A DNA stretch of 64,000 bases from Octopus sinensis (GCF_006345805.1 NC_042997.1:143716001-143780000), one strand, 5' to 3'. Positions 1,457-64,000 are shown, counted from the stretch's first letter. Made by a program: numbers and translations. Notes: generated by a model from the sequence alone, not told the origin.

Positions 1457-1479
1457 TATATATATATATATATATATAC

Positions 1480-2945: not shown

Positions 2946-2952
2946 TATATAT

Positions 2953-35561: not shown

Positions 35562-36372
35562 GATAATGGTTTCAAATTTTGGCACAAGGCCAGCAATTTC
35601 GGGAGTTGGGGTTAGTCGATTACATAGACTCCAGTGCTCAACTGGTACTTATTTTACCGACCCCGAAAGGATAAAAGATAAACGTCAACCACGGTGGAAT
35701 TTGAACTCAGAACGTAAAGACGGGCGAAATGTCGCTAAACATTTTGCCCGGCGTGCTTACGATTCTTTTCTACTCTAGGCACAAGGCCCGAAATTTTTGG
35801 AAAGGGGGCCAGTCGATTAGATCGACCCCAGTACACAACTGCTACTTAATTTATCGACCCCGAAAGTCATGAAAAGCAAAGTCGACCTCTGAAAAATTTG
35901 AACTCAGAACGTAAAGACAGACGAAATACCGATAAACATTTCACCCGATGTGCTAACGTTTCTTATTTCTTTATTGCCCACAAGGGGCTAAACATAGAGG
36001 AGACAAACAAGTACAGACAAAGGGATTAAGTTGATTACATCGACCCCAGTGCGTAACTGGTAATCGATCTCGAAAGGATGAAAGGCAAAGTCGACATCGG
36101 CGGAATTTGAACTCAGAACGTAGCGGCAGACGAAATACCTATTTCTTTACTACCCACAAGGGGCTAAACACAGAGAGGACAAACAAGGACAGACAAACGG
36201 ATTAAGTCTATTATATCGACCCCCAGTGCGTAACTGGCACTTATTTAATCGACCCCGAAAGGATGAAAGGCAAAGTCAACCTCGGCGGAATTTGAACTCA
36301 GAACGTAACGGCAGACGTAATGCCGCTAAGCATTTCCCCTGGCGTGCTAACATTTCTGCCAGCTTACCGCCT
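35562..36372 (-). mobile_element. Tandem array of about 4 SINE family A units
   Basis: Repeated minus-strand bodies; internal GGTATTT junction at 36133-36139. Confidence 0.85.
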
Positions 36373-37534
36373 TATGCTTAGCGATTCTGCCAGCTTAGCA
36401 TTCTAATGCTGACGTTTAATAATGCGTAAAATTTTTAACTGGGAATATCGTTGTCTTGGGGATCAATATTACTTGAAGATGATATAACCGCTGTATCACT
36501 GTGTTTGTGTTTCAAGTGGGGAAGAGAGTAGAAAAAAAATGAAGTGGAATCCAAAGCAAAAATTCTACATCAGTGTAAACAAACTCCATCACGTTCCAGC
36601 GAGTAAGTCTTGACGCGGTCACTCAATCTGTTAGAAATTGCAACCAAATCAAGCCTCGAATAAAACATTACTGTCATTTGAAGAGAAAGAGAGAAGGAGA
36701 AAGAGAAGAAAAGAGAAGAGAAGAGAAGTGAGAGAGAGAAAAGAATATATAGGATAATGAAGTCCTAGATACACGTTCTCAAATCTATTAAGAATAGCAA
36801 CCAAGTCAAGCCTCAGACAAAACTTTGCTGTCTTTTGAAGGGAAAAGAAGAAAGGGAGAGAGAGAAGTTGAGAGAGAGGGAGGGGGAGGGGGGAGGGGGA
36901 GGGAGGGAGAGAATGAGAGAGAACATATCAGGCAACGTTCTGAAAAAAAAAGAATGGGAAAGAATACAGCCGTAAGTGATGGTCTTGGCTGGAACGTCTT
37001 TAATCATTTGTCTAACCTATAAGCGCAGTAGCAATGGCGGCAACAACAGCTACGTGGAGGGGCAATGGCCCAGTAGTTAGGGCAGCGGACTCGCGGTCGT
37101 AAGAACGCGGTTTCTATTCCCAGACCGGGCATTGTGAGTGTTTATTGAGCAAAAACACCTAAGCTTCACGATGCTCCGGCAGGGGCGGGGGGTGTGAACC
37201 CCGCTGTACTCTTTCACCACAACTTTCTCTCACTCTTTCTTCCTACTTCTGCCACAAAGTAGAGGAACCATGGTGTAAACCACTATGGTGTGGTAAACTT
37301 TCAGACCCTAGTCGAGATTGCGAATCCTCTGTACCCCAGGATGGGTCAGCTCTCCACCCGTTAAAAGCCACCGTTTACGGAATGAGGATAACAACGTAGC
37401 TTTCGCGCCCGTGCAACCGCCAGTCTATCGCGTGTGGTGGGTGGATCTTCAAGTTGCCACAAGCACTCTTAGTAGCTCAGATTAGGCTCGAATGAGAGAT
37501 TATTCTTTGTGGCTAATGGCATGAGTCCTGATTG

Positions 37535-47245: not shown

Positions 47246-48294
47246 TATACTGTATTTAATCGTTTTGAGTATTGTGTATTCATTTTGGATATGTTATATT
47301 CTCGTCATTAACGCGTCACTCGTATGTGTGTGTATTTGTGTGTGTGTACGTGCGAGTGTATTAATATGTATGTGTGTACGTGCGTGTGTATTTGTGTGTG
47401 TATGTCTGACAGTTACGTCTAATCAAGTCAATGTGAAGGTCCCACCTTAATGGTTAGAGGCTTAATGACGTGGATCAAGATCGTAAAGTATTGGGTTCGA
47501 TGCTCGGCAGTCAATTGTGTCCTCGAGCAAGACACATTACTTCATATTGCCTCAGTCCACTCAGCCGGCAAAAATGAAATGGACCTGTACTTTAAAGGAC
47601 CAGCCTTGTCACATTCTGTGTCACACTGAATCTCCCTGAGAACTACGTTAAGGATACGCGTGTCCGTGGAGCGCTAAGCCACTTGCACGTTAATTACATT
47701 AGCAGGCTGTTCTGCCGATCGGATCAATTGGAATTCTCGTCGTCGTAACCGACGGGGTGGAAATCAAGTTAAAACAAAACGGGCGTTGTATGTGTTCATC
47801 GAATTAAAGATTAAAGATGGATCAATAAGTATTAGAATCGATATGGCTGATTAAAAATTCATTGGCTGCAGTTCAGTGATAAGAACCAATAAAAGAGGAG
47901 GCACAAGGTGACAAATTTTGAGGGAGAAGTTTAATCGATTAAGCAGTCACCATTGTTTACCTGCTTATTTATTTATCGATTACAACAGGTTAAAAGGCGA
48001 ATATGACTTCGATGAGAATTGAACTAAAAAGTTAATTGTCTGTTAATGAATTCCACAAGACATTAATTTCGACGTCCTAATGATTTTACTCGTTACAATT
48101 AAAAGACAGAATTAAGTACGAGGCAAATATAGAGCTTATGCATGGCGACACGGCATACTAAAATTACCAGCCAAATTGCTGTCAAATCATAACCTACTGT
48201 TTTAGAAAGGATACACCCTGGAGGCTGAACTACAAGCGGCTCTGAATAAAGCAAACATAGAAGAGCAGGGTTGATACATATTGATCTTTGGTTT

Positions 48295-48562
48295 GGCATT
48301 CTTTCGATATAACTCGACAAAATCTAAACATTTCACTTCGGGTATTTCTGTGGGTTGTGGAGTATAGATATAAGGAAATTATGCCAGCAATGTCTCATTT
48401 AAAAAAAAAAAATGCCTTGCATATTTGTTCTTACCTGTTTCATGTGTGTATGTAAAATCTGCAAATTTCCAAGCAGAAAACAGAATCGAACTGTCATTTG
48501 CTTCCATGGAAATACCCGAAGTGAAATGTTTTGATTTTGTCGAGTTATATCGAAAGAATGCC
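48295..48562. mobile_element. MITE with 54-bp TIRs, GG termini and 8-bp TSD (Merlin-like)
   Basis: TIRs 48295-48348 and 48509-48562 (1 mismatch); TSD tttggttt at 48287-48294 and 48563-48570. Confidence 0.85.
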
Positions 48563-48769
48563 TTTGGTTTCTTTGAAGGGAGCTAATTAGGGACCAAACA
48601 TAGCAACAACTATAATGATTTTGTTGGTAAGAGTAATTTTTCAGATTCTTGGCTGCTACTTTCAGCAAGACCAGTGGTCATGTAAATTTTCCTATATCGC
48701 TTCCTTATAATTGTCAATAGTGAAGATTGTATTGCTGACATCATAATAATTTAACCGTACAGCCGACAG

Positions 48770-48843
48770 GGCTCCATAGCTCAGTTGGTTAGAGCGCCAG
48801 TCTAGTAAACTGGAGGTCGAGTGTTCGAATCTCTCTGGAGCCT
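48770..48843 (+). tRNA. trnT: tRNA-Thr(AGT)
   Basis: 74-nt cloverleaf GGCTCCA/TGGAGCC, D stem GCTC/GAGC, CCAGT-CTAGTAA-ACTGG, TTCGAAT loop, U73; long T run just downstream; U52-U62 mismatch. Confidence 0.85.
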
Positions 48844-49523
48844 ACATAAAATAATTTTTTTTTTTTCCTAAAAATTGATTGGTACTGATATTCATTTCTG
48901 AAATGCACACAAGTCCCACCGGTTGTTTTGATAAATCCGGTAGAATGACAACACAAGCAATTTGATGCTGCTGTTGAAAGAGATAATTGGCTACAATTTC
49001 CTGCAAATCCAGTGGTCATGTAAAGCTTCGTTCATCATTTCGTTCCCTTTGTTAATGTTGAACAATATATTGTAATATCTAATACGTTCTGAGTTCAAAT
49101 TCTGCCGAGGTTGACTTTGACTTTCATCTTTTCGGGATCGATAAATTAAGTACCAGTTGCGTACTGGAGTAGATCTAATCGACTGGTTTCCCGCCTCCCA
49201 AAATTTCGGGCCTTGTGCCTTGAGTAGAAAAAATATCCAATACAACACACCATAAAGAAGACGACATTATATCTTATGTTAAACTAGGAGTTAGTTACAC
49301 CGATGTCTCTCCAGTAATTTTTACAGTAAATGAGAAAACGTTATAGTAAAAATGCTCTGTTAAACTGATGTTAATAAAAATACTTGTGTAAAAATAGAGT
49401 CAATAGCGTATCATCAGGCAACAATGAACATCATTATAATTTATAACTACAGATTGTTATTGTTCGTTACACACAGATGTTACGATTGTTACATCATAAC
49501 AATTCAAAGATGTTGACTTGTGT

Positions 49524-49597
49524 GGCTCCGTGGCTCAATTTGATAGAGCGCCAGTTTAATAGACTGTAGGTCATGGTCTCAAATCTCTCTGGATCCT
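49524..49597 (+). pseudogene. tRNA-Thr pseudogene (anticodon drifted to AAT, B box broken)
   Basis: 74 nt colinear with the intact copies; loop TTAATAG; gtctcaaatc in place of gttcgaatc. Confidence 0.8.
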
Positions 49598-50150
49598 TGT
49601 ATATTTTTCCTAAACATTCCTTTATTTTTTTGCTTCTTCTTTGCTGAAGATACAATGGTAGAAATATTGGTTTCGAATTTAGGCACAAGACCAGTAATTT
49701 CGAAGGAAGGGTAAGTCGATTACATCGCTCTCAGTGTTCATCCGAATGGATGAAAGGTAAAGTCAAGCTCGGCGGAATTTGAACTCCGGGTATGAAAATG
49801 GACGAAATACCGCGAAGTACTTCGCCCGGCGTGCTAACGAATCTGCCAGCTCACCGCCTTTGCAGATGGTAGTATTGACGATTGTACTCTAATGCCCATT
49901 ACAACTTACCATACAGGACCCGTTATATCTTATGTTGGACCGAGAGTTGTTACACTGATATGTCTGTTTTCTCTAATCTCCACTGTAGATAAGCACATAT
50001 TTTAGTGTGTTTGCTAAATTAATATCAATAAAGATACTGAACTAAATTTAGCAATGACCTACGATAACAATGAACGTCATTATAATTAGTTTCAGGATAG
50101 GTTTACGTTACAATTATCGACGTCATTATAATTTAAACGTACAATGCGGC

Positions 50151-50218
50151 GTGACTCAGTTGGTTAGTGCAACAGTCTAGTAAACTAGAAGTCGAGTTTT
50201 CGAATCTCTCTGTAGCCT
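50151..50218 (+). pseudogene. tRNA-Thr(AGT) pseudogene, 5' acceptor strand deleted
   Basis: gactcagttggttag..cagtctagtaaact..ttcgaatctctctgtagcct. Confidence 0.8.
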
Positions 50219-50806
50219 ACATAATGTGAACAATTGTTTTTTTTTTCTCAAGCTAGATTGAAACCGATATTAATTTCTGAAATGTAAACAAGGCAACAAA
50301 ATCTTACAGTTGAAAATAACCGATCATTTCGACCATATCATTTCACTGATTCTTTTAGTAAATCAGGAGTGAGGAAAACAATAAAAATTTTGATCTTGTT
50401 GAATGAGAAATTATTCATATACTTGACTGCTATTTCCAGTAGATCCAGTGGTTACATAAAAATTCTGCTGTCAGTGTTGAAGATTGTATCGTATGTAATG
50501 TCCAATATGATAACTCACAATAACGAAGACATTATATCTTATATTAAACCAAGAGTTATGCTGATATCTCTCTTTCTTGTAAACTTTACGGTAAATAAAA
50601 AGAAAGAGAAGCCCTAGTAAGCGTGTTCGTTAAACTAATATCATAAGTAAGAATACAAGTTTAAAAATAGAAGAGTTAATAATATATAACAAGGCACCAC
50701 CAAACAACAATGAACATCATTATACTTTGTATCTATAGATTCTATGTCATTGTTCATTATGTACAGACGTTATCATTGTCAACGTCACAATAATTTAAAA
50801 GTCGCA

Positions 50807-50863
50807 AGCTGCATAGCCAGTTCTATAAATCAGCGATCGTTTGTTCGAGTCTCTCTCAGGCCT
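50807..50863 (+). pseudogene. tRNA-Thr pseudogene, D arm deleted
   Basis: Paralogous position; gttcgagtctctctcaggcct 3' half recognisable. Confidence 0.6.
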
Positions 50864-51195
50864 CGTTCCCCCCCCCCCCGCCAAAGCATTCTTAATATTT
50901 CTTCGATATAGCTTCATTGGTACAAATATTGCTTAAAAGTGCACACAAACTTATAAACTTTTTTCGGTTGTATATCATCTATTATATGGATCTTAGTATT
51001 TTCGGCGTTTCATTTTAGTAAAACTGGAGCGGTGAAAAACCAATATAGATTTGAGCTGTATATGAACCCAGAACTTGAAGACCTTGATCTAACGATCTGA
51101 CGAAACCGGGGACTTGATAAGTTGATCAGTTAATTGAATTCCTACATAACTGATATTATTGAAAATTTTTATGTAATAATTGAAGACATAATAAT

Positions 51196-51583
51196 CCTTT
51201 CTACAACAAGTACAAAACCTGAAACAGTGGGAGAGGGAGCTAGTAGATTACATCGACCCCATTACTTGACTAGTACTTATTTCAGTTTCCCGAAAGGATG
51301 AAAGGCAAAGTTGATCGTAAACTTTCAGAACGTAAACAAGGACGAAATACCTATTTCTTTATTGCTCACAAGGGGCTAAACATAGAGGGGACAAACAAGG
51401 ACAGACAAACGGATTCGGTCGATTATATCGACCCCAGTGCGTAACTGGTACTTAATTTATCAACCCCGAAACGATGAAAGGCAAAGTCGACCTCGGCGGA
51501 ATTTGAACTCAGAACGTAACGGCAGACGAAATACGGCTACGCATTTCGCCCGGCGTGCTAACGTTTCTGCCAGCTCGCCACCT
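51196..51583 (-). mobile_element. SINE family A dimer with 19-bp TSD
   Basis: TSD taatt(g/a)aagacataataat at 51177-51195 and 51584-51602. Confidence 0.85.
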
Positions 51584-51628
51584 TAATTAAAGACATAATA
51601 ATAATATTATGAGCTGCATGTAATAACG

Positions 51629-51702
51629 GGCTCCATAGCTCAGTTGGTTAGAGCGCCAGTCTAGTAAACTGGAGGTCGAGTGTTCGAGTCCCTCTAGAGC
51701 CT
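51629..51702 (+). tRNA. trnT: tRNA-Thr(AGT), one acceptor-stem mismatch
   Basis: Full cloverleaf with a C6-A67 mismatch; TTTT downstream. Confidence 0.75.
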
Positions 51703-51762
51703 AGCCCCGGTCGAAATTTTACCTTTTGGTCTGCAAAGGAGTCTATATTGGTGCTAATATTT

Positions 51763-52350
51763 ATTTCTTTATTGCCCACAAGGGGCTAAACATAGAGGGG
51801 ACAGACAAAGGGAGTAAGTCGATTACATCGGCCCCAGTGCATAGCTGGTACTTATTTAATCGACCCCGAAAGGATGAAAGGCAAAGTCGACCTCGGTGGA
51901 ATTTGAACTCAGAACGCAACAGCAGACGAAATACCTATTTCTTTACTGCCCACATGGGGCTACACACAGAGCGGAGAATCACGGACAGACAAATGGATTG
52001 AGTTGATTATATCGACCCCAGTGCGTAACTGGTACTTATTTAATCGACCCCGAAAGGATGAAAAGCTAAGTCGACCTCGGCGGAATTTGAACTCAGAACG
52101 TAGCGGCAGACGAAATACCTATTTCTTTATTACCCACAAGAGGCTAAACACAGAGGAGACAAACAAGGACAGACATAGGTATTAAATCGATTACATCGAC
52201 CCCAGTGCGTAACTGGTACTTAATTTATCGACCCCGAAAGGATGAAAGGCAAAGTCGACCTCGGCGGAATTCGAACTCACAACGTAACGCAGACGAAATA
52301 CCACTAAGCATTTCGCCCGGTGTGCTAACGATTCTGCTAGCTCGTCGCCT
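51763..52350 (-). mobile_element. SINE family A trimer
   Basis: Units joined at GGTATTT junctions 51929-51935 and 52113-52119 (period 184 bp). Confidence 0.85.
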
Positions 52351-52395
52351 TAATTAAAGACATAGTGATAATATTATGAGAATTATGTAAGAACT

Positions 52396-52469
52396 GGCTC
52401 CGTAGCTCAGTTGGTCAGAGTGCCAGTCTAGTAAACTGGAGGTCGAGTGTTCGAGTCCCTCTGGAGCCT
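52396..52469 (+). tRNA. trnT: tRNA-Thr(AGT)
   Basis: Full cloverleaf with G7-U66 and G10-U25 wobbles; TTTT downstream. Confidence 0.8.
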
Positions 52470-53811
52470 AGTATTCTGTTCGTAATTTTACTTTTGCTCC
52501 GCAAAGGAGATTATGTTAGTGCTAATATTGATTCCTGAAATGCATACAAAACCACAAACGTCTGAGGTTGGTGCATTGACAGCTTCTCACGTCAGTTGTT
52601 GTAATGGAAGCCTACGCATGACGAAACGTTTCACTTTCCGTACAGGGATCAAGTGGAAAAAAAAATACTTGACAACTTGGAAGAATTCTCCTTCTTCTAT
52701 GGATGATTGCTGTAACTGAGATCACTTGTTTGGAGCGACAAAAAAAAAAAAATAACAAAAAAAAACAGAAGGTTCTCACGCTGACTCTTGTATCTTATAA
52801 CTCTCTTTTACTAGAACAAAGGAAAAGAATAGGTACCGAGAGCCACACTTTAGGATAGAAGAGTAATTGATTAAGTGGAACATATCTGAGGCCCGGTAGA
52901 TAAGAGGAAAACTTGAACTCTACAGAAATTGACCTCACTGTGTAAACTGCCTTAACTAAATGCCAGAAAACATTATTTTTGACATTCTACTGATTGTTCA
53001 ATCCATGTCTAAGGATCCATGACAACTATCGACTTTCTGCACGGTCGCTTGACGTGCTAGAAATATCATCCTGATCTTTTTAAACCATAACTTACTGTTT
53101 TAGAAAGGTGATACACATTGACAGTTGTATCACGAGAATAACGGGGTAAACTAAATATAGGATGATTAGTTTTGGAATGTCATCTTTCATGTGTGTGTTT
53201 GAACAGGGATAATTATGGGTTAAACAGCAGCAACAGCTATATTGCTTGTGATTTTATAAGAGAAATTAGTCAGATACTTGGCTGCTATTTCAAGCAAATC
53301 CATTGGTCATGCAAAGCTTCTATGTTGTTTCATTGCCGTTGTTAATATTGTACTAAGGCCATTTCGCCTAGGTCGGCTGCTTCCGCTGAGGACTAGTAAT
53401 TCTCCGAGGTCAACTTTACCTTTCATGGTTGATAAAATAATAGCATTTGATAACCGAGGTTGATGTAGTAGACTAACTCCTTCACGCTACTGTTGGCCTT
53501 GCACCAAAATTTGAAACCTTCAAAATTTGAAGATTGTATTGCGATGTCCAATACAACTTACCGCAGATAACTCATTGTATCTTATGTTGGTTCGGAAGTT
53601 GTTGTACGGATATTTCTTACGTAATCTCCACTTAAGCCGACGTTATAGTGAGATTGTTTGCTGAGTAAATATTGAAAATGATACTAGAATAAATGTAACA
53701 ACCTATCACCATAGCAACAATGAACGGCATTATAATTGGACACAACAGTTTCAGTATAGTTTAACCTTATAATTATCGACGTCACAATAATTTAAACATA
53801 CAAGCCGACGT

Positions 53812-53885
53812 GTTTTCATAGGTAGGTTGGTCAGCCTGTTAATCAAATAAACTGATGATCGGGTATTCGAATCCTGCTGGAGCCT
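53812..53885 (+). pseudogene. tRNA-Thr pseudogene, heavily substituted
   Basis: 74 nt colinear; ttcgaatcc and tggagcct retained; loop CAAATAA. Confidence 0.7.
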
Positions 53886-54245
53886 CCGTGTTATGGTCCC
53901 ACTCCCGCCTTTTTTTTCACAAGCTAGATTTGGCACTGATATTGGTTTCTAAAATGCACAAAAGTCCACAAAGGTTAACACTGATGTATAATCGATTATA
54001 CCGACCCCAGTATTTCACTGGGTCTTTCAGTAAATCTGCTGGGAAGAGAGCGGTAACAGTTATGATATCCTTGTTGAAAGAGTAATTTTTCGTATACTTT
54101 GCTGCTATTTCAAACGAATCCAGTGGTCACATAAAGCCTCGCTCGTCATTTCGTTACCATTAATAATTAACAATGTACTGCAATATCCAAACGATAACTT
54201 AGCATAAAGACGACTACATTATATCTTATATTAAAGTTACACTGG

Positions 54246-54303
<58 letters not shown>

Positions 54304-54528
54304 CTGATTTCTTCGCAAACATAAAGATGTTCTAGTAATAATGATTTGTTACATAAATGTCAATAAGGATAGTTGTGTAAAAATAGAGGAGTAAACAATG
54401 TAACGTGGTATCACAAAGCAACAATGAACATTATTATAATTGCTAACTACAGTTTCTATGGAATTATTCATTATACACAGATGTTACTATTGTTGACGTC
54501 ACAATACTTCAAAGAGGTCGATGTGAGT

Positions 54529-54599
54529 GGCTTTAAAGTTAAGGTTAGACCGTCAATTTATAAAAGAGGATCTCAAGTGTTTGAGTCCCTCTAGTAGCT
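54529..54599 (+). pseudogene. tRNA-Thr pseudogene, heavily decayed
   Basis: Paralogous position; aagtgtttgagtccctc T arm remnant. Confidence 0.6.
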
Positions 54600-55185
54600 T
54601 ATTTTTCTGGAACATTAGTTATTTCTTCTTTGTCTGAGATAGAATGATACGAATATTGATTTTAAAAATGTACACAAAGTTGCATACAAACTTCTTTAGG
54701 TGTCTATGATGGATTATTTCGACTTTAGTATTGTCGGCATTTTTAGCTTTTAGTGAAACCTGAAGGATGGAAACCAGAACAGACCTGAGCGGATAATGAA
54801 CTCAGAATTGTATGTAAACACCTTGAAGACTTTGTTGTAACGATTTGACGAAACCACAAACTTTAAGTTGGTGAGATAATTGAGTTCTTAAGTAATGATG
54901 CTATTGAAATTTTTACGCAATAATTGAAGACATAGTAATCCTTTCTACTATTGGCACAAGGCCTAAAATTGTGGCGACGGGGCTAGTTGATTACATCGAC
55001 TCCAGTACACGACTGGTACATGACTGAAAGCATGAAGGCAAAGTCGACCTCAGCAGAATTTGAACTCGGACCGTGAGGACTGACAAAATGCCGCTAAGCA
55101 TTTCGCTAGGCGCGTTAACGATTTTGCCAGCTCGTCACCTTAATTGAAGACATAAAAGTAATAATTTAATCAGGACGTGTAGACT

Positions 55186-55250
55186 GGCCCCATAGCACAG
55201 TTGGTTAGAGCATCAGTCTTGTAAGCTGGAGGCTGAGTGTTCGAGTCCAT
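55186..55250 (+). pseudogene. tRNA-Thr pseudogene with TGT anticodon, 3' acceptor strand lost
   Basis: GGCCCCATAGCACAGTTGGTTAGAGCATCAGT-CTTGTAA-GCTGG...GTTCGAGTCC. Confidence 0.75.
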
Positions 55251-55643
55251 GCTGTTTAATTATTCTCTTTTTGGCATATGATATTGGTTCCTGAGATGCA
55301 TACATAGCCACAAACGTTTGAGGTTGGTGTATTGGAATTACCCCTGCTGCCCAAAATTTTTGGCCATGTTCCAAAATTTGAAACTAATGTTGTATTAAGG
55401 GAACGAGCTGGCAGAGTCGTTACAAAATGCTCAGCATCATTTCACCTGACTTTGGATTCTCAGTTCAAATTCAACGGAAGTCGGCTCAGCCTTTCATTCT
55501 TGCTGGGTCGATAAAAGAAGTTCCAGTTGAACACTGGGGTCGATGTAATCGTCTTAATTCTTCCTGCAATTTCTGGCCTTGTGCCAAAATTTGAAACCAA
55601 CATGGACGATTGTATTTGAATGTCCAGTACAACTTACCGTATA

Positions 55644-56298
55644 GATCCCTGTACGGAAAGTGAAACGTTTCGTCATGCGTAGGCTTCCATTACAACAACT
55701 GACGTGAGAAGCTGTCAATGCACCAACCTCAAACGTTTGTGGTTTTGTATGCATTTCAGGAATCAATATTAGCACTAACATAATCTCCTTTGCGGAGCAA
55801 AAGTAAAATTACGAACAGAATACTAGGCTCCAGAGGGACTCGAACACTCGACCTCCAGTTTACTAGACTGGCGCTCTGACCAACTGAGCTACGGAGCCAG
55901 TTCTTACATAATGCTCATAATATTATTACTATGTCTTTAATTAAGGCGACGAGCTAGCAGAATCGTTAGCACACCGGGCGAAATGCTTAGTGGTATTTCG
56001 TCTGCGTTACGTTGTGAGTTCGAATTCCGCCGAGGTCGACTTTGCCTTTCATCCTTTCGGGGTCGATAAATTAAGTACCAGTTACGCACTGGGGTCGATG
56101 TAATCGATTTAATACCTATGTCTGTCCTTGTTTGTCTCCTCTGTGTTTAGCCTCTTGTGGGTAATAAAGAAATAGGTATTTCGTCTGCCGCTACGTTCTG
56201 AGTTCAAATTCCGCCGAGGTCGACTTAGCTTTTCATCCTTTCGGGGTCGATTAAATAAGTACCAGTTACGCACTGGGGTCGATATAATCAACTCAATC
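55644..56298 (-). repeat. 655-bp inverted duplicate of 51996-52650
   Basis: Reverse complement match with only 4 substitutions seen by eye. Confidence 0.95.
55825..55898 (-). tRNA. trnT: tRNA-Thr(AGT), inverted copy
   Basis: Full cloverleaf on the minus strand; differs from 52396-52469 at one position (C25). Confidence 0.85.
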
Positions 56299-56446
56299 GT
56301 ATGTAGTCCGAAAGCTGTTGCACTGATGTATGTCTCTCCTGTAGTCTCCACATAAAAGAACAGAAATTTTAGTGGCAGTGCAGTTTCATTATAAGTTTAC
56401 GTTATAATTGTAGACGTCATAATAGTTTAAACGCACAATCCCACGT

Positions 56447-56496
56447 GGTTACGTGCCACAGTTCGTTAGAGTTCCAGTCAAGTAAGTGAGAGGCCT
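56447..56496 (+). pseudogene. tRNA-Thr pseudogene, T arm deleted
   Basis: cagttcgttagagttccagtcaagtaa followed directly by aggcct. Confidence 0.6.
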
Positions 56497-56957
56497 ACTC
56501 AATGTGGTTTCTATTTTCCTTTTCTCAAGATAGATTGATACAGATATTGATATCTAAAATGCACACAAAGACACAAAAACTTGCAGTGGAATTTAACTAC
56601 GTTAGTATTTCATTGTTTCCTTTAGTAAATACGGTAGGACGTAAACCGTAACAATTTTGATGTTGTTGAAAGAGGAATTATTCAAAAATTTGGCTACTAT
56701 TTCCAGCGAAACCAGTGGTCTCATAAAGCTTCTTTCGTCGCTTTGTTGCTGTTGTCAATGGCGACCAAGGATCTTTACCTTTTGACCGACAGATTTAAAA
56801 AATAATTTTTTGTAACTAAATACTTTCAAACTTCGTACACTGGTAGAATGTGTCATATAAAACATCTTTTACTCCTAGCGTTTTTGAGAAAAGCTTATAT
56901 TTAGGAAGTTATTTCACGTTAAAGTTGTAGTATTTCGGTAATTTCAACCAATCAATG

Positions 56958-57262
56958 ACGTGTATTGAGCTGAATAAAATTACTGCAAGAACTTCCGGCG
57001 GCGTATATATCGTTTGTCACTGTTATTTAAGACAACCCTAACCGTAACACTAAAACCCCAACCCTAACACTAAAATCGTAACCCTAGCACACTAACCCTA
57101 AAACCCTAACCCTAACACCCAAACCTTAACCCAAAACCTTAAAGCTAAAACCAGTACAAACGCACGAAAGATGTCATAAATAACAGTAACAAACGAAAGA
57201 TACACCGCCGATAGTTATTGTTGACAAGCAACGGCAGTAATTTTATTCAGCTCAATACACGT
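56958..57262. mobile_element. Nested foldback element with degenerate telomeric (CCCTAA)n core
   Basis: Perfect 29-bp outer IR (56958-56986/57234-57262), 39-bp inner IR with about 5 mismatches (56996-57034/57172-57210), ccctaa-like repeats at 57035-57150. Confidence 0.8.
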
Positions 57263-57778
57263 AAAATTCACACACCTATTGTAGCAGCCCTTCGGTTTTT
57301 CCAAGCTTTGTAAAAAAAACTTGGAAGTTTGGGCCTCCATTCAGGCCTTCCGCGAAACCCTTAAAGCCAGGAAGTTTTTGTATATATTAGAAACGTCGTA
57401 GAAAGAGCGTTTGTTAAATTAAAATTAGTAATAATACTGGGGAAAAAAATAGAGGAGCAAATAATCCTTTCTACTAAAGGCACAATGCCTGAAACTTGGG
57501 CGGAGGGGACAAATAGATTACATCGACCAGTGTTTCAATAGTACTTAATTTATTAACAACAAAAGTATGAAAGGTAAAGTCCGCGGTGGAAATTGAAATC
57601 AGAACGTAGCGACGGGCGAAATACCTCGAAACATTTCGTCTCTGCTGACGATTCTGCCAGCTTGCCAAATAGCAAGGGTTGTGATTATAATTGCTAACTA
57701 CATTTCTATGTAATTATTTTTTATACACAGACATTAACATTGTTGACGTCACATTACTTTAAAGACGTAGGTGTGAGT

Positions 57779-57857
57779 GTCTCTAAAGTGAGTATCTCAG
57801 GTTAGACTCGCAATTTATAAAACTGGAAGTCAAGTGTTCGAGTCCCTCTAGAAGCTT
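57779..57857 (+). pseudogene. tRNA-Thr pseudogene (paralog of 54529)
   Basis: aactggaagtcaagtgttcgagtccctctagaagctt 3' half recognisable. Confidence 0.65.
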
Positions 57858-58059
57858 ATTGTTGTTTTGGAATATTTCTTTTTTTTTCTTTGTTTGAGAT
57901 AGAATGATAGGAATATCGATTTCTAAAGTGTACACCAACTTACAGATTTCTTCGGATGTCTACAATGGATTATTTCCACTTTAGTAATGGGGTTATTGAA
58001 ATGTCATTGCATAATAATTTAACACATAATAATAATGATTTAAGTATCTTGTACGCACT

Positions 58060-58133
58060 GGCTCCGTAGCTCAGATGGTTAGAGCGCCAGTCTAGTAAAC
58101 TGGAGGTCGAGTGTTCGAGTCCCTCCGGAGCCT
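58060..58133 (+). tRNA. trnT: tRNA-Thr(AGT)
   Basis: Perfect acceptor stem GGCTCCG/CGGAGCC; TTTT directly downstream. Confidence 0.85.
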
Positions 58134-59467
58134 AGTATTTTCGCTGAAGATTTTCAATTTTTTTTTCTGTAAGAGGGATGATATTGATATATGTATTGTT
58201 TCCTGAATGACTTAGAAAATCCACGAACAAGCGTTTGTGGTTGATGTATGGACAGGTTCTCACGTCAGTTGTTGTTATGGAAACCTAGTCACGATGAAGC
58301 AGTTCACGTTACTTACGTCGGTCGACTTGAACTAGATACTGAAACAACTTAGCAAAATTCTTCTTCTTTCCTGGATGATCGCTTGTTTGCAGCGACCGAA
58401 GGAACATGTAGAAGGTTCTCTCACTGATTCCTGTATCTTGTGAATCGCTTTTACTATAACAGAGTTGAAGAATACGTAACAAGTGCCACACTTTAGGAAA
58501 GAAGTGTAAATGATTTTATAGACACAATTACTTCGTTGGAAGATATTTATGAGGTCTTGAAGAATGAAAGGTAAACTTGAGCTCTGCAGGAATTGAATTC
58601 GATGTGTAAATGGCCTTAACTAAATGGTAAAAGGCATTAATTACAACATTCTCTTGATTGTTCATTCAATGTCTAAGGATATAAAATAAGCCTATCGAGT
58701 TTCTGTTCATTCGATGTCTAAGGATATAAAATAAGCCTATCGAGTTTCTACGTGGCTGCTTGAAGTACTAGAAATATCAGTCAAAACCATCTAAACCATA
58801 ACTTATTGTTTTAGAACGGAGATAAACTAAATATAGGATGGTCTGTTTTGGAACGCCATAGGTGTGTTTGAACAAGGTTAGTTCGGGGTTAAACAACAGC
58901 TATATTGCTTGTGATGATAAAAGAGAACTTATTCAGATAGTTGGCTTTTATGTTAAGCAGATCCATTGGTCACGCAAGCATCCTGTGTCGTTTCGTCACC
59001 GTTGGTAATATTGTATTAAGGTTGATTAATTTCGCCGAGGACGAGTAATTCGCCGAGGTCGACTTAACCTTTCATCCATTTGGGGCTGATAAAATAAGTA
59101 GCATTTGAGAACTGGGGTCGATGTAATCGACTAATTCCTATCCGCTATTTCTTGCCAAGTACCAAAATTTGAAACCCACATTGAAGATTGTATTACGAAG
59201 TCCAATACAGTTCACCGCAGATAACTCACTGTATCTTATGTTGGTGCGGGAGTTGTTGCACAGATATGTGTCTCTCTTTTGTAATCTCCACTTAAATAAG
59301 CCGACGTTATAGTGAGATTGTTTTCTGAACAAATATTAATAACGATACTAGAATAAATGAAGCACCATAGCAACAATGGGCGACATTATAATTGGTTACC
59401 ACAGTTTTAGTATAGGTTTAGGTTACAATTATCTACGTTACTATCATCTAGACATACAGCTCGACGT

Positions 59468-59486
59468 GTCATTATAGCTTAGTTGG
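59468..59486 (+). pseudogene. tRNA-Thr 5' stub truncated by a SINE
   Basis: tatagcttagttgg at the expected paralogous position, then a family A SINE at 59487-59700. Confidence 0.5.
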
Positions 59487-59731
59487 AAGTCGGCGAGTTG
59501 GCAGAATCGTTAGCACGCCGGGCAAAATGCCTAGTAGTATTTCGCCTGTCATTACGCTCTGAGTTCAAATTCCGCCGAGGTCGACTTTGCCTTTCATCCT
59601 TCGGGGTCGATAAATTAAGTACCAGTTACATATTGGAGTCGATCTAATCGAATGGCCCCATCCCCCAAAATTCAGGGCCTTGTGCCTAGAGTAGAAAAGA
59701 TTATATCTTATATCAAACTAGAAGCTACACT

Positions 59732-59765
<34 letters not shown>

Positions 59766-60002
59766 GTTTTCTTTACAGCAAATATAAAGACTTTATAGTA
59801 AGAGTGTTTTTGTTGAACTGATATGAAGAAGGATAGTTATGTAAAAATAGAGATAATAATAATATGACGTAGTATCACCAAACAACAATGAACATCGTTA
59901 TAAGTTCTAACTACAGTTTCTATGGAATTATTATACACAGGCATTGTCATTGTTGACCTCAAAATATTTTAATATCATTGTTGACCTCAAAATAATTTAA
60001 AA

Positions 60003-60522
60003 CTTCTGAAAGTTATCCAGTGTCTTTGGCACGAATATACATTTGAACAGACTGGCTAGCTGATTATCATCGGGACCTAGGGCTTCCCCCAAGGTATCGT
60101 CACATTTCGCCTCTACCACCCCTCTATAGAAGAATGTGGTAGAACTACTAACGCAGGCGTTGCCCGAGAGATGGAATATCCGGGGAGCCTTACGACACTC
60201 CGTAAACCATGTACCCAGCTTCGATCTACGATGGAACCAGGTTTCCCAGCGGAGACCACACCCGTTCACCAATCAGATGGACCCACCGGATTTCCTGTGC
60301 ATCATCAACCAAGGCATCCCTAGCCCACCCTCTAACGGTTGTTGGAAGCAAATAGAACATCTCACAAGCGGCTTCGAGCCCTTCCACAAGAAGCGGAAGA
60401 GCTGTCTTTCCAGCTTGCTCAACCACGAATCAGGGCAGGAAACGACGGTTAGGCGGTAGGTGATGACCGATGCGATGAACACATTGGCCCCCTCCGCCCC
60501 TTTTCAGGGATATCTACCGCCA
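60003..60522 (-). mobile_element. Internal L1/Tx1 ORF2 fragment, related to the 18.9-19.6 kb element
   Basis: FIASVITYRLTVVSC..LERQLFRFLWKG..LVRCSIC.QQP..GGLGMP; both ends truncated, no tail. Confidence 0.85.
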
Positions 60523-61257
60523 AGACCATGGCTATGTGGGCCACCCTTCCGCCCAAAGTTGCTGGCTTACCCCTTCCACCCAAAGTTGCTGGCTTTGTTT
60601 TAAAGTTTGAAACAAATGTTGTATTAAGGCAGCGAGCTGGCAGAATCGTTAGCGTGCCGGACAAAATGCTTAGCAGCATTTCATACGACTTTAGATTCTG
60701 AGTTCAAATTCAATTGAGATCGACCTCGCTTTTATCCTTCATGGGTCGATAAAAGAAATACCAGTTACCGATTATATCTGCGTTAGTATTTAATTGTTTC
60801 CTTAAGTAAATACGATAGGACGAAACGGTAACAATTTGGATCTTGCTGAAAGAGGAACTATTGAAAAAGTTGGCTGCTATTTCCAGTGAATCCAGTGGTC
60901 ATATAAAGCATCGTTTGTCTTTTCGTTACCGTTTTTAATGAACAAGTATTGTAATGTCCAACACGATAACTTAGCATAAAGAAGACAACATTATATCTTA
61001 TATTAAATCAGGAGTTACACTGATCTCTCCCTCTATCCGGTTTTCTTAACAGCAAATATAAATACATTCCAGTAGGGCGATTCGTTAAACTAATGTCAAT
61101 AAAAATAATTGTGTAGAAGTAGAGGAGTAACTAATATAACGTGGTTCACGAAACAACAATGAACATAATTATAACTGTTAACTACAGTTTCTATGGAATT
61201 ATATACACAGACATTACCATTGTCGACCTCACAATAATTATAGACGTCGAAGTGAGT

Positions 61258-61329
61258 GGCTCAATAGTTCAGGTTAGCCCGCCAATTCTTAAAACTGGGT
61301 GTCAAGTGCTCGAGTTCCTACCGAAGCTT
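61258..61329 (+). pseudogene. tRNA-Thr pseudogene (paralog of 54529/57779)
   Basis: ggctcaatagttcaggttag...aaactgggtgtcaagtgctcgagttcc. Confidence 0.65.
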
Positions 61330-61972
61330 GTTTCTTTTTCTGGAATATTTCTGTTTTTTTTTTTTCGTTTGAGATAGACTGATACAAACATTGCTTTTAA
61401 AAATATACACAAAGTTACAGATTTCTTGGATGTCTAAAATGGATTATTTTGACCTTAGAATTGTCGATGATTTTTGATTTTAGTGAAACCTGAAGGATAG
61501 AAATCAGAAAAGAGCTGGGTGGTTTATAAATCCAGACCTGTATGTAAATATGTTGAAGACCTTGTTTATGAACACAGAACTGTATATCAATATTTTGAAG
61601 ACCTTGCTTTAACGATTTGACGAAACCACAGACTTTGTATGTTGGTGAGTTAGCTGAGTTCTCATGTAATGATATTGAAATATTTTTACGCAATAATTGA
61701 AAGCATAATAATGCTTTCTGCTATTGACACAAGGCCTGAAATTGTGGGGTAGGGGGACAGTCGATTACATCGACTCCGGTACATAACCGGTACTTATTTC
61801 ATCCACCCCAAAATGATGGATGGCAAAGTTGACCTCGGCGGAATCTGAAGTTAGAACGTAGGGACTGATGAATGACGCTAAGCATTTCGCCCGGCGTGTT
61901 AAAGATTCTTCCATCTCGCCACCTTAATTGAAGACAAAATAAAAATTATTATTGAAACGCCGTTTGCAACGA

Positions 61973-62046
61973 GGCTCTGTAGCTCAGTTGGTTAGAGCGC
62001 CAGTCTAGTAAACTGGAGGTCGAGTGTTCGAATCCCTCCGGAGCCT
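61973..62046 (+). tRNA. trnT: tRNA-Thr(AGT)
   Basis: Full cloverleaf with U6-G67 wobble and G7-C66; T5 downstream. Confidence 0.85.
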
Positions 62047-62669
62047 GAGTAAGCTACTTACATTTTTATTTTGTTTCATAAAGCATATGATATTGGTGTA
62101 TATATTGGTTCCTGAAATTCATACAGAGCCACAAACGTTTGGGGTTGGTGTATTCGGCTTACCCCTCCCGACCAAAATTGCCGACCTTGTTCCAAAATTC
62201 GGGACCAATGTTGTATTAAGGCAGCAAGCTGCCAGAATCGTTACTGCGCCGCACAAAATGCTTAGCTACATTTCGCCAGACATTAGGTTCCAGGTTCAAA
62301 TTCCGGCTATGTCGATTTTACCTTTCATCCTTACTGGGTTCATAAAATAAGTAGCATTTGATAACTTAGATCGATGCAATTTTGAAATCAATATTGTAGA
62401 TTGTACAACTTATCAAATAGAAGTCATTATATCTTATGTTGGCCCAGGAGTTGTTGCACTGACATATTTCTCTCCTGTAGTCTCCACATAAATTAACACA
62501 CTTTATAGTGAAACTGTTAGCTAAACAAATATTAATAAGAATACTGGAATAAATGTAACAGAGGACCACCATAACAACAATGAACGTCATTATAATTTCT
62601 GTGTAGTTTCAATATAGGTTTAAGTTATAACCATCGAAGTCATAATAATTTAAAGGTGCGAACCGGCGT

Positions 62670-62743
62670 GGCTCTGTAGCTGAGATGTTCGGAGTACTAA
62701 TCTAGTAAGCCGGAGTTCGAGTTTTCGATTCCTCCTGAAGCTT
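62670..62743 (+). pseudogene. tRNA-Thr(AGT) pseudogene
   Basis: 74 nt colinear; CTAGTAA loop kept, stems mispaired. Confidence 0.75.
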
Positions 62744-63064
62744 AAATAGTGTGGTTTCTCTTTTACTCAAGCGAGATTGATACGTATATTGATTTCTAAA
62801 ATGAACACAATGCCATAAAGATTTGTAGTGGAATATAATCAATTATAACCATCTTAGTATATCACTGATTCTGTTAGTAAATCCAGAGGGATAAAAGCAG
62901 TAAGAATTTTGTTGGAAGAGGAATTAATGAGATAATGGCTGCTATTTCCAGCAAATCCAGCGTCACGTAAAGTTTCGCTTGTCATTTCGTTGCTGTTAAT
63001 GTTGAACAATGTATTGTAACGTTTAGTATGATACTCATTATAAAGAAGACGACATTGTATCTTA

Positions 63065-63280
63065 CGAGGGAGTGCAGAAACGTTCCCGGCTTGGGTACAA
63101 GAAAACAGAGGAGGATCAGTTAATTATGATCTTATTCAACAATTTTCTGTCTCAGATTCACACATTCATTGCAGCAGTCCTTCTGGTTTTCTAACCCTTG
63201 AAAAGAACTTGGAAGTTTGGGCCTCCAACAAGGCCTTCCACGAAACCTTTAAATCCCAGGAGGATTTCAGCACTCCGTCG
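63065..63280. mobile_element. mariner-type MITE (216 bp)
   Basis: TA-cgagggagtgcagaaa ... tttcagcactccgtcg-TA; a homologous remnant lies at ~57270-57385. Confidence 0.8.
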
Positions 63281-64000
63281 TATATGAAATCGACGTCTTT
63301 CTCTCTTCTGTAATCTTCACTGTAAATAATATGACGCCGTAGAATGAGCGTTTGTTAAGCTAATAACAGTAATAATACTGGGGCAAAATCAGAGGAGCAA
63401 ATAATCCTTTCTACTAAAGACACAACACTTGAAATTTGGTGGGAGGGGACTCGTCGATTACATAGATCACAGTGTTTCACTGGGACTTAATTTATCGACT
63501 CCAAAAGGATGAAAGGCGTAGTCGACCTCTGTGGAATTTGAACTGAGAACGTAGCCACGGGCGAAATACCACTAAACATTTCGGTCAGCGTGCTGTTCAT
63601 TAATTTCATTTTTCTCTGCAAGGGAGATGATATTGGTGCACATAATGGTTCCTGAAATGCATACAAAACCACAAATAATTGAGGTTGATATCGTCAGGTT
63701 CTGACGTCAGTTGTAATGGAAACCTGCTCTTGAAGGATTTCACATTACATATATAGGTCAACTTGAACAAAAAAATGAGACAAGATGGCAAAATTCTCCT
63801 TTTACGGACGATCGCATTTTACTGAAGATCACTTGTTTGGAACGAATGAAGAAACAGATACAAGGTTCTCTCACTGATTCCTGTCTCTTACGAATCTCTT
63901 TTACGGCGTAAGAGTAAAAGAATATTACCAAGCGTCACACTTCAGGAAAGAATTGTAATTGATTATATAGGCACAATTTCTTCGTCAGAATATATTTGTG

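What the first reader, a model, noticed from the sequence alone, without database searches (positions are those of the whole stretch)
48100..64000. Tandem tRNA-Thr(AGT) array: 6 conserved genes among 11 decayed paralogs
Seen: 17 tRNA-like units in homologous but clearly diverged spacers. The six intact copies (48770, 51629, 52396, 55825 minus, 58060, 61973) differ by only 1-5 nt and share an invariant anticodon-to-T-loop core. Each has a nearby oligo(T) terminator. Base pair 7:66 covaries (A-U at 48770/51629, G.U at 52396/55825, G-C at 58060/61973). Inference: purifying selection on tRNA structure in a birth-and-death array dedicated to one isoacceptor. Whether this locus or family is already described is not known to me.
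Basis: partly seen in the sequence, partly recalled or inferred. Interest (0 to 1): 0.85.

Follow-up and report, generated by a model that had tools for sequence, protein, structure and literature searches.

The report
Clustered threonine tRNA genes with decayed copies
A 15-kb stretch of what looks like an octopus-type genome holds 16 tandem copies of one threonine tRNA gene; six have been kept intact by selection while ten have decayed, which is an ordinary, well-known kind of animal tRNA gene cluster.

Summary
ARAGORN and Rfam both call six tRNA-Thr(AGT) genes at exactly the stated coordinates (59-68 bits). A profile built from them finds ten further decayed copies, so 16 units, not 17. All lie in 48.77-62.74 kb and none in the other 48 kb.

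Flanking homology sorts the units into three types (a, b, c) that recur in the order a-b-c. The array is therefore a rearranged three-unit higher-order repeat of about 2.1 kb, and it runs off the window's right end.

Intact bodies are 93-96% identical. Their best-aligned flanks are only 79-86% identical, and the ±40 nt next to the gene only 56-60%. Decayed bodies (72-77%) are no better conserved than their flanks. Differences from the consensus are bimodal (1-3 versus 14-32).

This supports purifying selection on the mature tRNA, with four caveats:
- Two intact copies are a 99.4% recent inverted duplicate.
- The 7:66 covariation is a single pair and not statistically distinctive.
- Every unit carries a 52:62 T-stem mismatch.
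- All type-b pseudogenes were probably copied when already dead.

Expression is untested. This is a new member of a known kind (a homogeneous tDNA cluster).

The parts
48572..64000 (+). The whole tRNA-Thr(AGT) array. Units are about 0.65-0.8 kb and are arranged as a rearranged a-b-c higher-order repeat. The left edge lies just after a foldback element. The right edge is cut by the end of the window.
   Evidence: Self-BLAST blocks: 49875-51276~53527-55019, 52351-53830~58015-59486 and 53993-55549~60769-62380. The leftmost non-SINE paralogy is 48572-48722~53198-53350. Segment 63593-64000 matches the sequence downstream of T3/T5, so the array continues past the window.
48770..48843 (+). T1, intact tRNA-Thr(AGT), flank type a. 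Pair 7:66 is A-U. It carries A59 and a U52.U62 mismatch.
   Evidence: (68.1 bits). A run of 12 T starts at +12.
49524..49597 (+). P1, decayed copy, flank type b. It has 16 differences from the consensus and its anticodon loop is disrupted.
   Evidence: nhmmer E=6e-12. Rfam 26.7 bits, below the gathering score..
50145..50218 (+). P2, decayed copy, type a. It has 14 differences; AGT is retained but G53 has become T and the acceptor 5' half is lost.
50790..50863 (+). P3, strongly decayed copy, type b, with 32 differences.
   Evidence: E=0.011; E=1.8e-9 with the 16-unit profile
51629..51702 (+). T2, tRNA-Thr(AGT), type c. It is intact by the covariance-model score but has a C6.A67 mismatch. Pair 7:66 is A-U.
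   Evidence: (60.3 bits)
52396..52469 (+). T3, intact tRNA-Thr(AGT), type c. It has a G10.U25 wobble pair, and 7:66 is G.U.
   Evidence: (59 bits)
53812..53885 (+). P4, decayed copy, type a, with 24 differences.
54526..54599 (+). P5, decayed copy, type b, with 27 differences. It shares a 3-nt D-loop deletion and anticodon-loop lesions with P8 and P9.
55186..55259 (+). P6, decayed copy, type c, and the positional homologue of T6 and T2. It has 17 differences, its anticodon is now TGT, and the 3' acceptor half is lost.
   Evidence: (25.8 bits)
55825..55898 (-). T4, intact tRNA-Thr(AGT), type c, inverted. It is one nucleotide different from T3.
   Evidence: (61.5 bits)
56447..56520 (+). P7, decayed copy, type a, with 29 differences. 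Only the 5' two-thirds is recognisable.
57783..57856 (+). P8, decayed copy, type b, with 24 differences.
58060..58133 (+). T5, intact tRNA-Thr(AGT), type c. Pair 7:66 is G-C, and it carries A16. It lacks the upstream SINE.
   Evidence: (63.1 bits)
61258..61328 (+). P9, decayed copy, type b, with 22 differences.
61973..62046 (+). T6, intact tRNA-Thr(AGT), type c. Pair 7:66 is G-C, 6:67 is a U.G wobble, and it carries A59.
   Evidence: (64.7 bits)
62670..62743 (+). P10, decayed copy, type a, with 19 differences. AGT is retained.
51996..52650 (+). One arm of a recent 655-bp inverted segmental duplication. It carries T3. The other arm is 55644-56298 and carries T4.
   Evidence: Self-BLAST gives 99.4% identity over 655 bp.
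55644..56298 (-). The second arm of the inverted duplication. It carries T4.
51388..51590 (-). A full-length copy of an abundant ~200-bp SINE-like repeat with a B-box-like segment. Its 5' end lies about 40 bp upstream of T2 and it points away from the gene. Copies sit at the same position before T3 (52158-52356), T4 (55938-56136, +), P6 (54984-55146) and T6 (61758-61930). The insertion therefore predates the amplification of the type-c unit.
   Evidence: A profile of the repeat finds 55 copies across the whole window. The shared junction 'CCTTAATTRAAGACA' is visible.

Best explanation
This is a homogeneous nuclear tRNA gene cluster in an animal genome, probably an octopod cephalopod.

Origin (inferred). 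One ancestral unit of about 0.7 kb carried an AT-rich upstream motif, a 74-nt tRNA-Thr(AGT) gene and an oligo-T terminator. It was triplicated into units a, b and c. The resulting ~2.1-kb triplet was then multiplied several times by unequal crossing-over or segmental duplication, possibly helped by the many SINE copies in the spacers. Deletions, a local c duplication (T2 to T3) and a recent 655-bp inverted duplication (T3 to T4) followed.

How the genes work (inferred from sequence).
- The six intact genes are RNA polymerase III type-2 units with an internal A box (TAGCTCAGTTGG) and B box (GTTCGAGTCC).
- They have no encoded CCA, and a run of 4-12 T begins 5-17 nt downstream.
- Their product would be a cytoplasmic tRNA-Thr. 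Its A34 would be deaminated to inosine to read ACU and ACC, and its A37 would carry t6A.

Selection. Purifying selection on the mature tRNA has held these six copies within 1-3 changes of the consensus. Their spacers diverged by about 20% over the same period, which is very roughly 30 million years on a published octopus repeat clock. The redundant copies have drifted at the neutral rate: all b units, most a units and one c unit.

Shown versus inferred. Shown: the gene calls, the unit types and their order, and the contrast between body and flank divergence. Inferred: the duplication mechanism, transcription, the modifications and the dating.
For: - Gene calls.
- Ten decayed paralogues confined to the array.
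- Flank typing and the recurring a-b-c order.
- Intact bodies are 93-96% identical, against flanks of 79-86% (best local alignments) or flanks that no longer align.
- Identity is 56-60% in the adjacent 40 nt, compared with 47% for random 40-mers.
- In the T3-unit against T5-unit alignment the tRNA body is the most conserved island. In the blocks that hold only decayed copies, the tRNA-like positions are among the least conserved.
- Distance from the consensus is bimodal, and relative-rate tests give p from 0.013 to 3e-6.
- All but one of the changes in intact copies keep pairing or fall at variable loop positions 16, 20a and 59. The exception is A67 in T2.
- Terminators are present.
- Near-identical Thr(AGT) genes occur in other eukaryotic contigs and score 66-74 bits. 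One of those contigs is also a tandem Thr(AGT) array.
- tDNA clusters with pseudogenes, and a triplet-unit tRNA array built by unequal crossing-over, are documented (PMC2888827, PMC2886086).
- Dating: JC 0.2 corresponds to about 56 My in Octopus vulgaris (PMC13282606), applied.
Against: - No expression data exist for this locus. Clustered tRNA genes in Arabidopsis are intact yet transcriptionally silent (PMC7544208).
- Every copy has a 52:62 T-stem mismatch, and T2 has a second mismatch.
- Minimum-free-energy folds do not return the cloverleaf.
- Covariance scores (59-68 bits) sit at or slightly below those of relatives (66-74 bits).
- Covariation is limited to one pair and is not significant.
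- Pairwise tests are not phylogenetically independent.
- The species is not identified. The only pointer is a LINE reverse transcriptase with 62-63% identity to Argonauta hians proteins, so the time estimate is rough.
Confidence: 0.8

Rival explanations
1. Concerted evolution without selection. Gene conversion among array members keeps some bodies alike, and the similarity says nothing about function.
For: Tandem tRNA arrays elsewhere do evolve concertedly. Examples are the Arabidopsis triplet array (PMC2886086) and metagenome contig L009, whose 1544-bp units are 99% identical. Variants such as A7, A59 and C66 are shared between copies of different flank type.
Against: The similarity stops exactly at the ends of the 74-nt mature tRNA in every comparison. 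Spacers are not homogenised (70-86%). Ten neighbouring copies were not rescued. T1 keeps 93-96% identity to type-c genes although its flanks barely align with theirs.
Confidence: 0.07
2. The bodies are under selection, but not for translation. The conserved copies would be kept as TFIIIC/Pol III binding sites (chromatin boundary elements) or as sources of tRNA-derived small RNAs. The shared T-arm mismatch would mark a non-canonical isodecoder.
For: All units carry the U52.C62 mismatch, which has been kept for the whole life of the array. The bare sequences prefer an alternative hairpin to the T arm. The locus is unusually dense in A/B-box-bearing units.
Against: Boundary function would constrain only the A and B boxes. 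Here the whole anticodon arm, the variable loop and the acceptor pairing are conserved. U33, A37, G18G19, T54-C56 and the G53-C61 pair are all canonical. Scores overlap those of ordinary Thr(AGT) genes.
Confidence: 0.06
3. The intact copies are merely young duplicates in a neutral, possibly silent array, and have not yet had time to decay.
For: T3 and T4 are exactly that, at 99.4% over 655 bp. Clustered tDNAs can be silent.
Against: The other intact pairs have flanks 14-21% diverged or no longer alignable. P6 and T6 share flanks at about 76-82% identity, yet P6 has 17 changes and T6 has 3.
Confidence: 0.04
4. The unit is the head of a tRNA-Thr-derived SINE or a tRNA-derived satellite, not a set of genes.
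For: The genome is saturated with a SINE-like repeat (55 copies in the window). Cephalopod genomes hold thousands of tRNA-derived loci (PMC6962438).
Against: No Thr-like unit occurs in the other 48 kb, although 35 of the SINE copies do. Homology between units extends upstream of the tRNA 5' end. No A-rich or LINE-like tail or constant downstream body is seen. The copies are head-to-tail. The abundant SINE's head shows no significant match to the Thr profile.
Confidence: 0.03

Closest known systems
Homogeneous tDNA clusters of animal genomes, as surveyed by Bermudez-Santana et al. 2010 (PMC2888827), for example in zebrafish, stickleback and Nematostella
   Same: Adjacent tRNA genes and pseudogenes of one isoacceptor family lie less than 1 kb apart, mostly in parallel orientation, with rapid turnover and many pseudogenes.
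   Different: This one has a three-unit higher-order periodicity and old, diverged spacers. I found no description of this particular locus, and no paper on cephalopod tRNA arrays, in the library searches. That is an absence of evidence only.
Arabidopsis thaliana chromosome 1 Ser-Tyr-Tyr tRNA array of 27 triplet units (Kane, Freeling & Lyons 2010, PMC2886086)
   Same: A triplet of tRNA genes is the basal unit that was multiplied in tandem. Unequal crossing-over is the proposed mechanism.
   Different: The Arabidopsis triplet mixes two isoacceptors, evolves concertedly and holds mostly intact genes that are epigenetically silenced (PMC7544208). Here all three units descend from one Thr(AGT) gene, the spacers are not homogenised, and ten of 16 copies are dead.
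Metagenome contig L009 (Ga0256844_10025380), a tandem tRNA-Thr(AGT) array from an unidentified eukaryote
   Same: It has the same isoacceptor, and positions 1-48 and the acceptor 3' half are identical to T1/T2. The repeat is tandem, with two genes per 1544-bp unit.
   Different: Its units are 99% identical and all three genes are identical. Its T stem is perfectly paired (ACGAG/CTCGT) and scores 74 bits. It shares no flank homology with the window and no SINE.
Entamoeba tRNA gene arrays (PMC2652664)
   Same: tRNA genes are organised as long tandem arrays.
   Different: The Entamoeba units hold several different tRNAs, are highly homogeneous, make up more than 10% of the genome and have short-tandem-repeat spacers.

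Membership tests
Eukaryotic nuclear tRNA-Thr(AGU) gene | Covariance-model score above the tRNA family threshold, and an independent tRNA-finder call with anticodon AGT | tested here: met
   Rfam RF00005 gives 59-68 bits against a gathering score of 29. ARAGORN calls Thr(agt) for all six. The ten decayed units fail both tests; the best reach 26.7 and 25.8 bits.
Eukaryotic nuclear tRNA-Thr(AGU) gene | Cloverleaf with 7/4/5/5-bp stems | tested here: inconclusive
   Standard pairs form in 94.4% of pair cells, and sliding the partners by one column drops this to 45-48%. However, pair 52:62 is never formed in any copy, T2 also has C6.A67, and thermodynamic folding alone does not recover the cloverleaf.
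Eukaryotic nuclear tRNA-Thr(AGU) gene | Conserved tertiary and identity nucleotides (U8, A14, G18G19, U33, A37, T54-Psi55-C56, A58, G53-C61), and no encoded CCA | tested here: met
   Read directly from the six sequences. The list of expected nucleotides comes from general knowledge of tRNA, not from a tool.
Eukaryotic nuclear tRNA-Thr(AGU) gene | Pol III type-2 signals: internal A and B boxes and a downstream run of at least four T | tested here: met
   The A box TAGCTCAGTTGG and B box GTTCGAGTCC are present in all six (the consensus is from general knowledge). Runs of 4-12 T start at +5 to +17, against a 14% background.
Eukaryotic nuclear tRNA-Thr(AGU) gene | Transcribed, processed, aminoacylated with threonine | not testable with these tools
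   No expression or biochemical data are available here.
Homogeneous tDNA cluster (criterion of PMC2888827: neighbouring tDNAs of one isoacceptor less than 1000 nt apart) | Neighbour spacing under 1 kb and a single isoacceptor family | tested here: met
   Twelve of 15 start-to-start neighbour distances are 277-839 nt. Three are longer (1336-3198 nt), where units were lost or insertions occurred. All units derive from Thr(AGT).
Concertedly evolving tandem tRNA array (Arabidopsis t-unit type) | Spacers and genes homogenised within the array | tested here: not met
   Same-type flanks are only 77-86% identical even in the best local alignments. Whole-block identity is 63-70%.
Concertedly evolving tandem tRNA array (Arabidopsis t-unit type) | A multi-gene unit as the basal repeat | tested here: met
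   The types occur in the order a b | a b c c' | a b c (c inverted) | a b c | b c | a. Every a with a successor is followed by b, and four of five b units are followed by c.
tRNA-derived SINE | A tRNA-related head at the extreme 5' end followed by a constant body and tail, with dispersed copies and target-site duplications | tested here: not met
   Homology between units extends upstream of the tRNA. No constant tail is seen. There are zero copies in the other 48 kb of the window. A genome-wide count could not be made.

The most novel reading that the evidence does not exclude
The array encodes a structurally non-canonical tRNA-Thr(AGU) isodecoder family. Its weakened T arm (U52.C62, kept in every copy for tens of millions of years) would itself be under selection for a specialised role, for example tissue-specific (neural) supply or regulated production of tRNA fragments. 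In that case the three-unit repeat with one live gene per triplet would be a functional architecture and not debris.
Probability: 0.07. Interest if true: 0.5.

Novelty: new member of a known kind. Interest (0 to 1): 0.22.

Why it matters
The locus is a clean natural experiment. Inside one 15-kb array, copies of the same gene with the same neighbourhood and similar age either stay within 1-3 changes of the consensus or drift at the spacer rate. The boundary of constraint falls exactly at the ends of the mature tRNA. That makes it a convenient locus for three purposes:
- calibrating tRNA-gene versus pseudogene calls in cephalopod genomes, where tRNA-derived loci number in the thousands;
- studying how higher-order tandem repeats of Pol III genes grow;
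- asking whether clustered tRNA genes in animals are silenced as they are in plants.

It does not change what is known about tRNA gene evolution.

Tried and rejected
- A 17th unit. I searched with a 6-copy profile, a 16-copy profile and Smith-Waterman scans of every inter-unit gap against a null from the rest of the window. Nothing credible turned up. The only hit above the 95% null lies inside a SINE.
- CpG hypermutability as the cause of the 7:66 'covariation'. Nine of the 15 changes relative to a G7-C66 ancestor are CpG transitions, so the idea was attractive. But CpG observed/expected is 0.95 in the window, so there is no sign of methylation-driven decay. I dropped it.
- A forced multiple alignment of 240/250-nt flanks. 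It aligned non-homologous sequence and exaggerated flank divergence. I replaced it with best local alignments, which bias against my conclusion.
- A literature search for the SINE sequence found only an unrelated primer match.
- A metagenome scan for the exact 32-nt core found nothing. A shorter anticodon-arm pattern gave nine loci. None shares flanks or the SINE with the window.
- A contig fetched through a reverse-transcriptase homologue (L010) has no SINE and no nucleotide similarity to the window. It could not serve as a sample of a related genome.
- Pfam gave no support for my impression that ORF 185-808 is a GIY-YIG (Penelope-like) domain.

Full report
**Observation.** ARAGORN finds exactly six tRNA genes in the 64-kb window. 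All are tRNA-Thr(AGT), at 48769-48845, 51628-51703, 52396-52469, 55825-55898(-), 58060-58133 and 61972-62047. Rfam's tRNA model calls the same six at 59-68 bits against a gathering score of 29, and nothing else in the window reaches any family's threshold.

The six 74-nt bodies differ pairwise by 1-5 nt. Linear positions 27-59, from the anticodon stem to the T loop, are invariant. Pair 7:66 is A-U in T1/T2, G.U in T3/T4 and G-C in T5/T6. Each gene is followed by a run of at least four T starting 5-17 nt downstream. A random site in this window has such a run within 25 nt 14% of the time.

A profile built from the six finds ten further, decayed copies: 49524, 50145, 50790, 53812, 54526, 55186, 56447, 57783, 61258 and 62670. 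Nothing at E<0.2 lies in the first 48.7 kb. A second profile from all 16 units and a gap-by-gap Smith-Waterman scan add no 17th copy.

**Context.** The window is animal DNA rich in microsatellites. A LINE reverse-transcriptase ORF (2852-4216; Pfam RVT_1) has its best named relatives in the octopod Argonauta hians at 62-63% identity. I therefore take the source to be a cephalopod of the octopus lineage. The species is not established.

A ~200-bp SINE-like repeat with a B-box-like segment occurs 55 times over the whole window, on both strands and often in short tandem runs. It is unrelated to the Thr units, whose profile does not match it significantly.

**Anatomy of the array.** Self-comparison shows multi-unit paralogous blocks:
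- 49875-51276 with 53527-55019, 66% identical;
- 52351-53830 with 58015-59486, 71%;
- 53993-55549 with 60769-62380, 71%;
- one inverted 655-bp duplicate, 99.4% identical, that carries T3 and T4.

Local alignment of 400-nt flanks sorts the 16 units into three types:
- a: T1, P2, P4, P7, P10;
- b: P1, P3, P5, P8, P9;
- c: T2, T3, T4, T5, T6, P6.

Along the DNA the order is a b | a b c c' | a b c (c inverted) | a b c | b c | a. This is a rearranged three-unit higher-order repeat of about 2.1 kb. The last 400 bases match the sequence downstream of T3/T5, so the array continues beyond the window.

All three types share a degenerate upstream motif, (G)TCAYAATAATTTAAA at about -35 to -18, and a downstream GATATTGA-like motif. 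They therefore descend from one ancestral unit.

A copy of the SINE lies with its 5' end about 40 bp upstream of T2, T3, T4, T6 and P6, at the same junction. That insertion predates the multiplication of the c unit.

Five of six c units are intact, one of five a units, and none of the five b units. P5, P8 and P9 (and probably P3) share a 3-nt D-loop deletion and the same anticodon-loop lesions. The b unit was therefore most likely already dead when the triplet was multiplied. I estimate 4-6 independent inactivations, not 10-11.

**Test of selection.** I used the best local flank alignments, counting mismatches only. This biases flank identity upward and so works against the conclusion.
- Intact pairs are 93-95% identical in the body and 79-86% in the flanks (T2-T3 p=0.039, T2-T6 p=0.031, T3-T5 p=7e-4, T3-T6 p=0.008).
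- For the other six pairs the bodies are 93-96% identical, but the flanks no longer give an alignment of score 60 or more.
- The 40 nt immediately upstream and downstream of intact genes are 60% and 56% identical on average. Random 40-mers give 47% and the bodies 94%. The constraint therefore ends at the ends of the mature tRNA.
- In the T3-unit against T5-unit alignment the tRNA is the most conserved island. In the blocks that contain only decayed copies, the tRNA-like positions are among the least conserved.
- Decayed copies are 72-77% identical in the body against 80-82% in the flanks.
- Distance from the six-copy consensus is bimodal, 1-3 against 14-32 changes. Positional homologues differ significantly: T6 3 against P6 17, p=0.003; T1 3 against P4 24, p=5e-5.

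These pairwise tests are not phylogenetically independent. The pattern is nonetheless consistent in every comparison.

**Nature of the changes in intact copies.** The changes fall in three groups:
- at variable loop positions (16, 20a, 59);
- at position 62, which is already unpaired;
- in stems, where they keep a standard pair: 7:66 G-C/G.U/A-U, 6:67 U.G in T6, and 10:25 G.U in T3.

The one exception is A67 in T2, which gives C6.A67.

Formally the covariation is thin. Only one pair changes on both sides, and 193 of 500 column shuffles do as well. Many of these changes are CpG transitions. However, the window shows no CpG depletion (observed/expected 0.95), so I do not invoke hypermutability.

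**Caveats on function.**
- All 16 units have T at position 52, so the T stem has a U52.C62 mismatch (U.U in T1) that goes back to the founder of the array.
- Relatives recovered from metagenomes have the same first 48 nt. L009 has a fully paired T stem (ACGAG/CTCGT, 74 bits). L004/L006 have a GAGGG/CCCCC stem with its own A50.C64 mismatch (68 bits). Together the relatives score 66-74 bits.
- The window's copies score 59-68 bits, and thermodynamic folding alone prefers an alternative hairpin to the T arm.
- The mismatch has been retained in all six constrained copies, so it is evidently tolerated. Whether canonical Thr(AGT) genes exist elsewhere in this genome could not be checked.
- Clustered tRNA genes can be intact yet silent, as in Arabidopsis (PMC7544208). 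Present-day expression is therefore an inference from long-term constraint, not a finding.

**Mechanism and dating (inferred).**
- The intact units have the sequence features of Pol III type-2 genes: A and B boxes, no encoded CCA, and an oligo-T terminator.
- Growth by unequal crossing-over at the level of the unit and then of the triplet is the standard model for such arrays (PMC2886086). The SINE copies that fill the spacers offer obvious substrates for misalignment. One end of the T3/T4 inverted duplicate and the T2-to-T3 duplication both lie in SINE copies.
- With about 20% pairwise flank mismatch, and the Octopus vulgaris repeat clock (JC 0.2 for about 56 My; PMC13282606), the triplet copies would be roughly 30 My old and the T3/T4 duplicate under 1 My. 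This is rough, because the species and its substitution rate are unknown.

**Comparison with what is known.** tDNA clusters of one isoacceptor family with many pseudogenes are common and fast-evolving in animal genomes (PMC2888827). Cephalopod genomes contain thousands of tRNA-derived loci (PMC6962438).

The closest structural analogue is the Arabidopsis array of 27 Ser-Tyr-Tyr triplets. The present array differs from it in three ways: it derives from a single isoacceptor, its spacers are not homogenised, and it is mostly dead.

A tandem Thr(AGT) array with 99%-identical 1544-bp units turned up in an unrelated metagenome contig (L009). It shows the concerted-evolution end of the same spectrum.

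The SINE-head alternative fails on the features I could test: homology extends upstream of the tRNA, there is no constant tail, and no copies lie in the other 48 kb. A genome-wide count was not possible.

**Verdict.** It is biologically ordinary: a new member of a known kind. Its modest interest lies in the three-unit higher-order structure, the sharp split between live and dead copies, and the fixed T-stem mismatch.

Noticed in passing
whole window; e.g. 14169-14770, 26911-27811, 35612-36374, 51798-52356: A ~200-bp SINE-like repeat with a B-box-like segment (GAGTTCAAATTCC) occurs 55 times in 64 kb on both strands. It often forms short head-to-tail runs with a period of about 184-197 bp, which is unusual for a retroposed element.
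   Followed up: partly
window 48295-48562: A foldback (MITE-like) element with 59-nt terminal inverted repeats, 95% complementary and 150 nt apart, lies directly at the left edge of the tRNA array. It gives sub-threshold hits to plant miRNA-precursor models on both strands (MIR821, 55-57 bits against a gathering score of 249).
   Followed up: partly
window 56958-57262: An element bounded by inverted repeats of about 77-91 nt has a core (57034-57138) of degenerate telomere-like CCCTAA repeats. It is inserted inside the array between P7 and P8.
   Followed up: no
window -35 to -18 upstream of all 16 units (e.g. 48738-48752, 62638-62652): An AT-rich motif, (G)TCAYAATAATTTAAA, is recognisable upstream of all three unit types. 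In types a and b it is preceded by a (T)GACGTCA (CRE-like) core. It could be a TATA-like upstream Pol III element or merely shared ancestry. It is not clearly better kept in the intact copies.
   Followed up: partly
L009 1-2063 and L003 1-140 (metagenome contigs): An unrelated eukaryotic contig carries a tandem array of identical tRNA-Thr(AGT) genes, two per 1544-bp unit, with units 99% identical. A second contig has the same gene truncated at position 22 and preceded by an A run, with an identical downstream flank.
   Followed up: partly
window 7903-8539: A GC-rich 18-bp minisatellite (CGACGACGAGGGCGATGG, about 34 copies, 94% matches) produces long spurious ORFs in several frames.
   Followed up: no
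window 185-808 and 2852-4216: These are retroelement remains. The 454-aa ORF has a Pfam RVT_1 domain, and its closest named relatives are in Argonauta hians. The upstream ORF begins with a YIGQTGRRLADRFAEH motif that reminded me of GIY-YIG (Penelope-like) nucleases, but Pfam gave no hit.
   Followed up: partly
window 55186-55259 (P6): The decayed type-c copy has the anticodon TGT instead of AGT. This is an anticodon shift within the Thr box, in a copy that has lost its 3' acceptor strand.
   Followed up: no
window 1-2000: This is a strongly C-rich, strand-asymmetric stretch (GC skew -0.46) made of CT-rich low-complexity repeats.
   Followed up: no
whole window: CpG observed/expected is about 0.95, so there is no CpG depletion despite the animal origin. 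This suggests little germline methylation of this region.
   Followed up: partly
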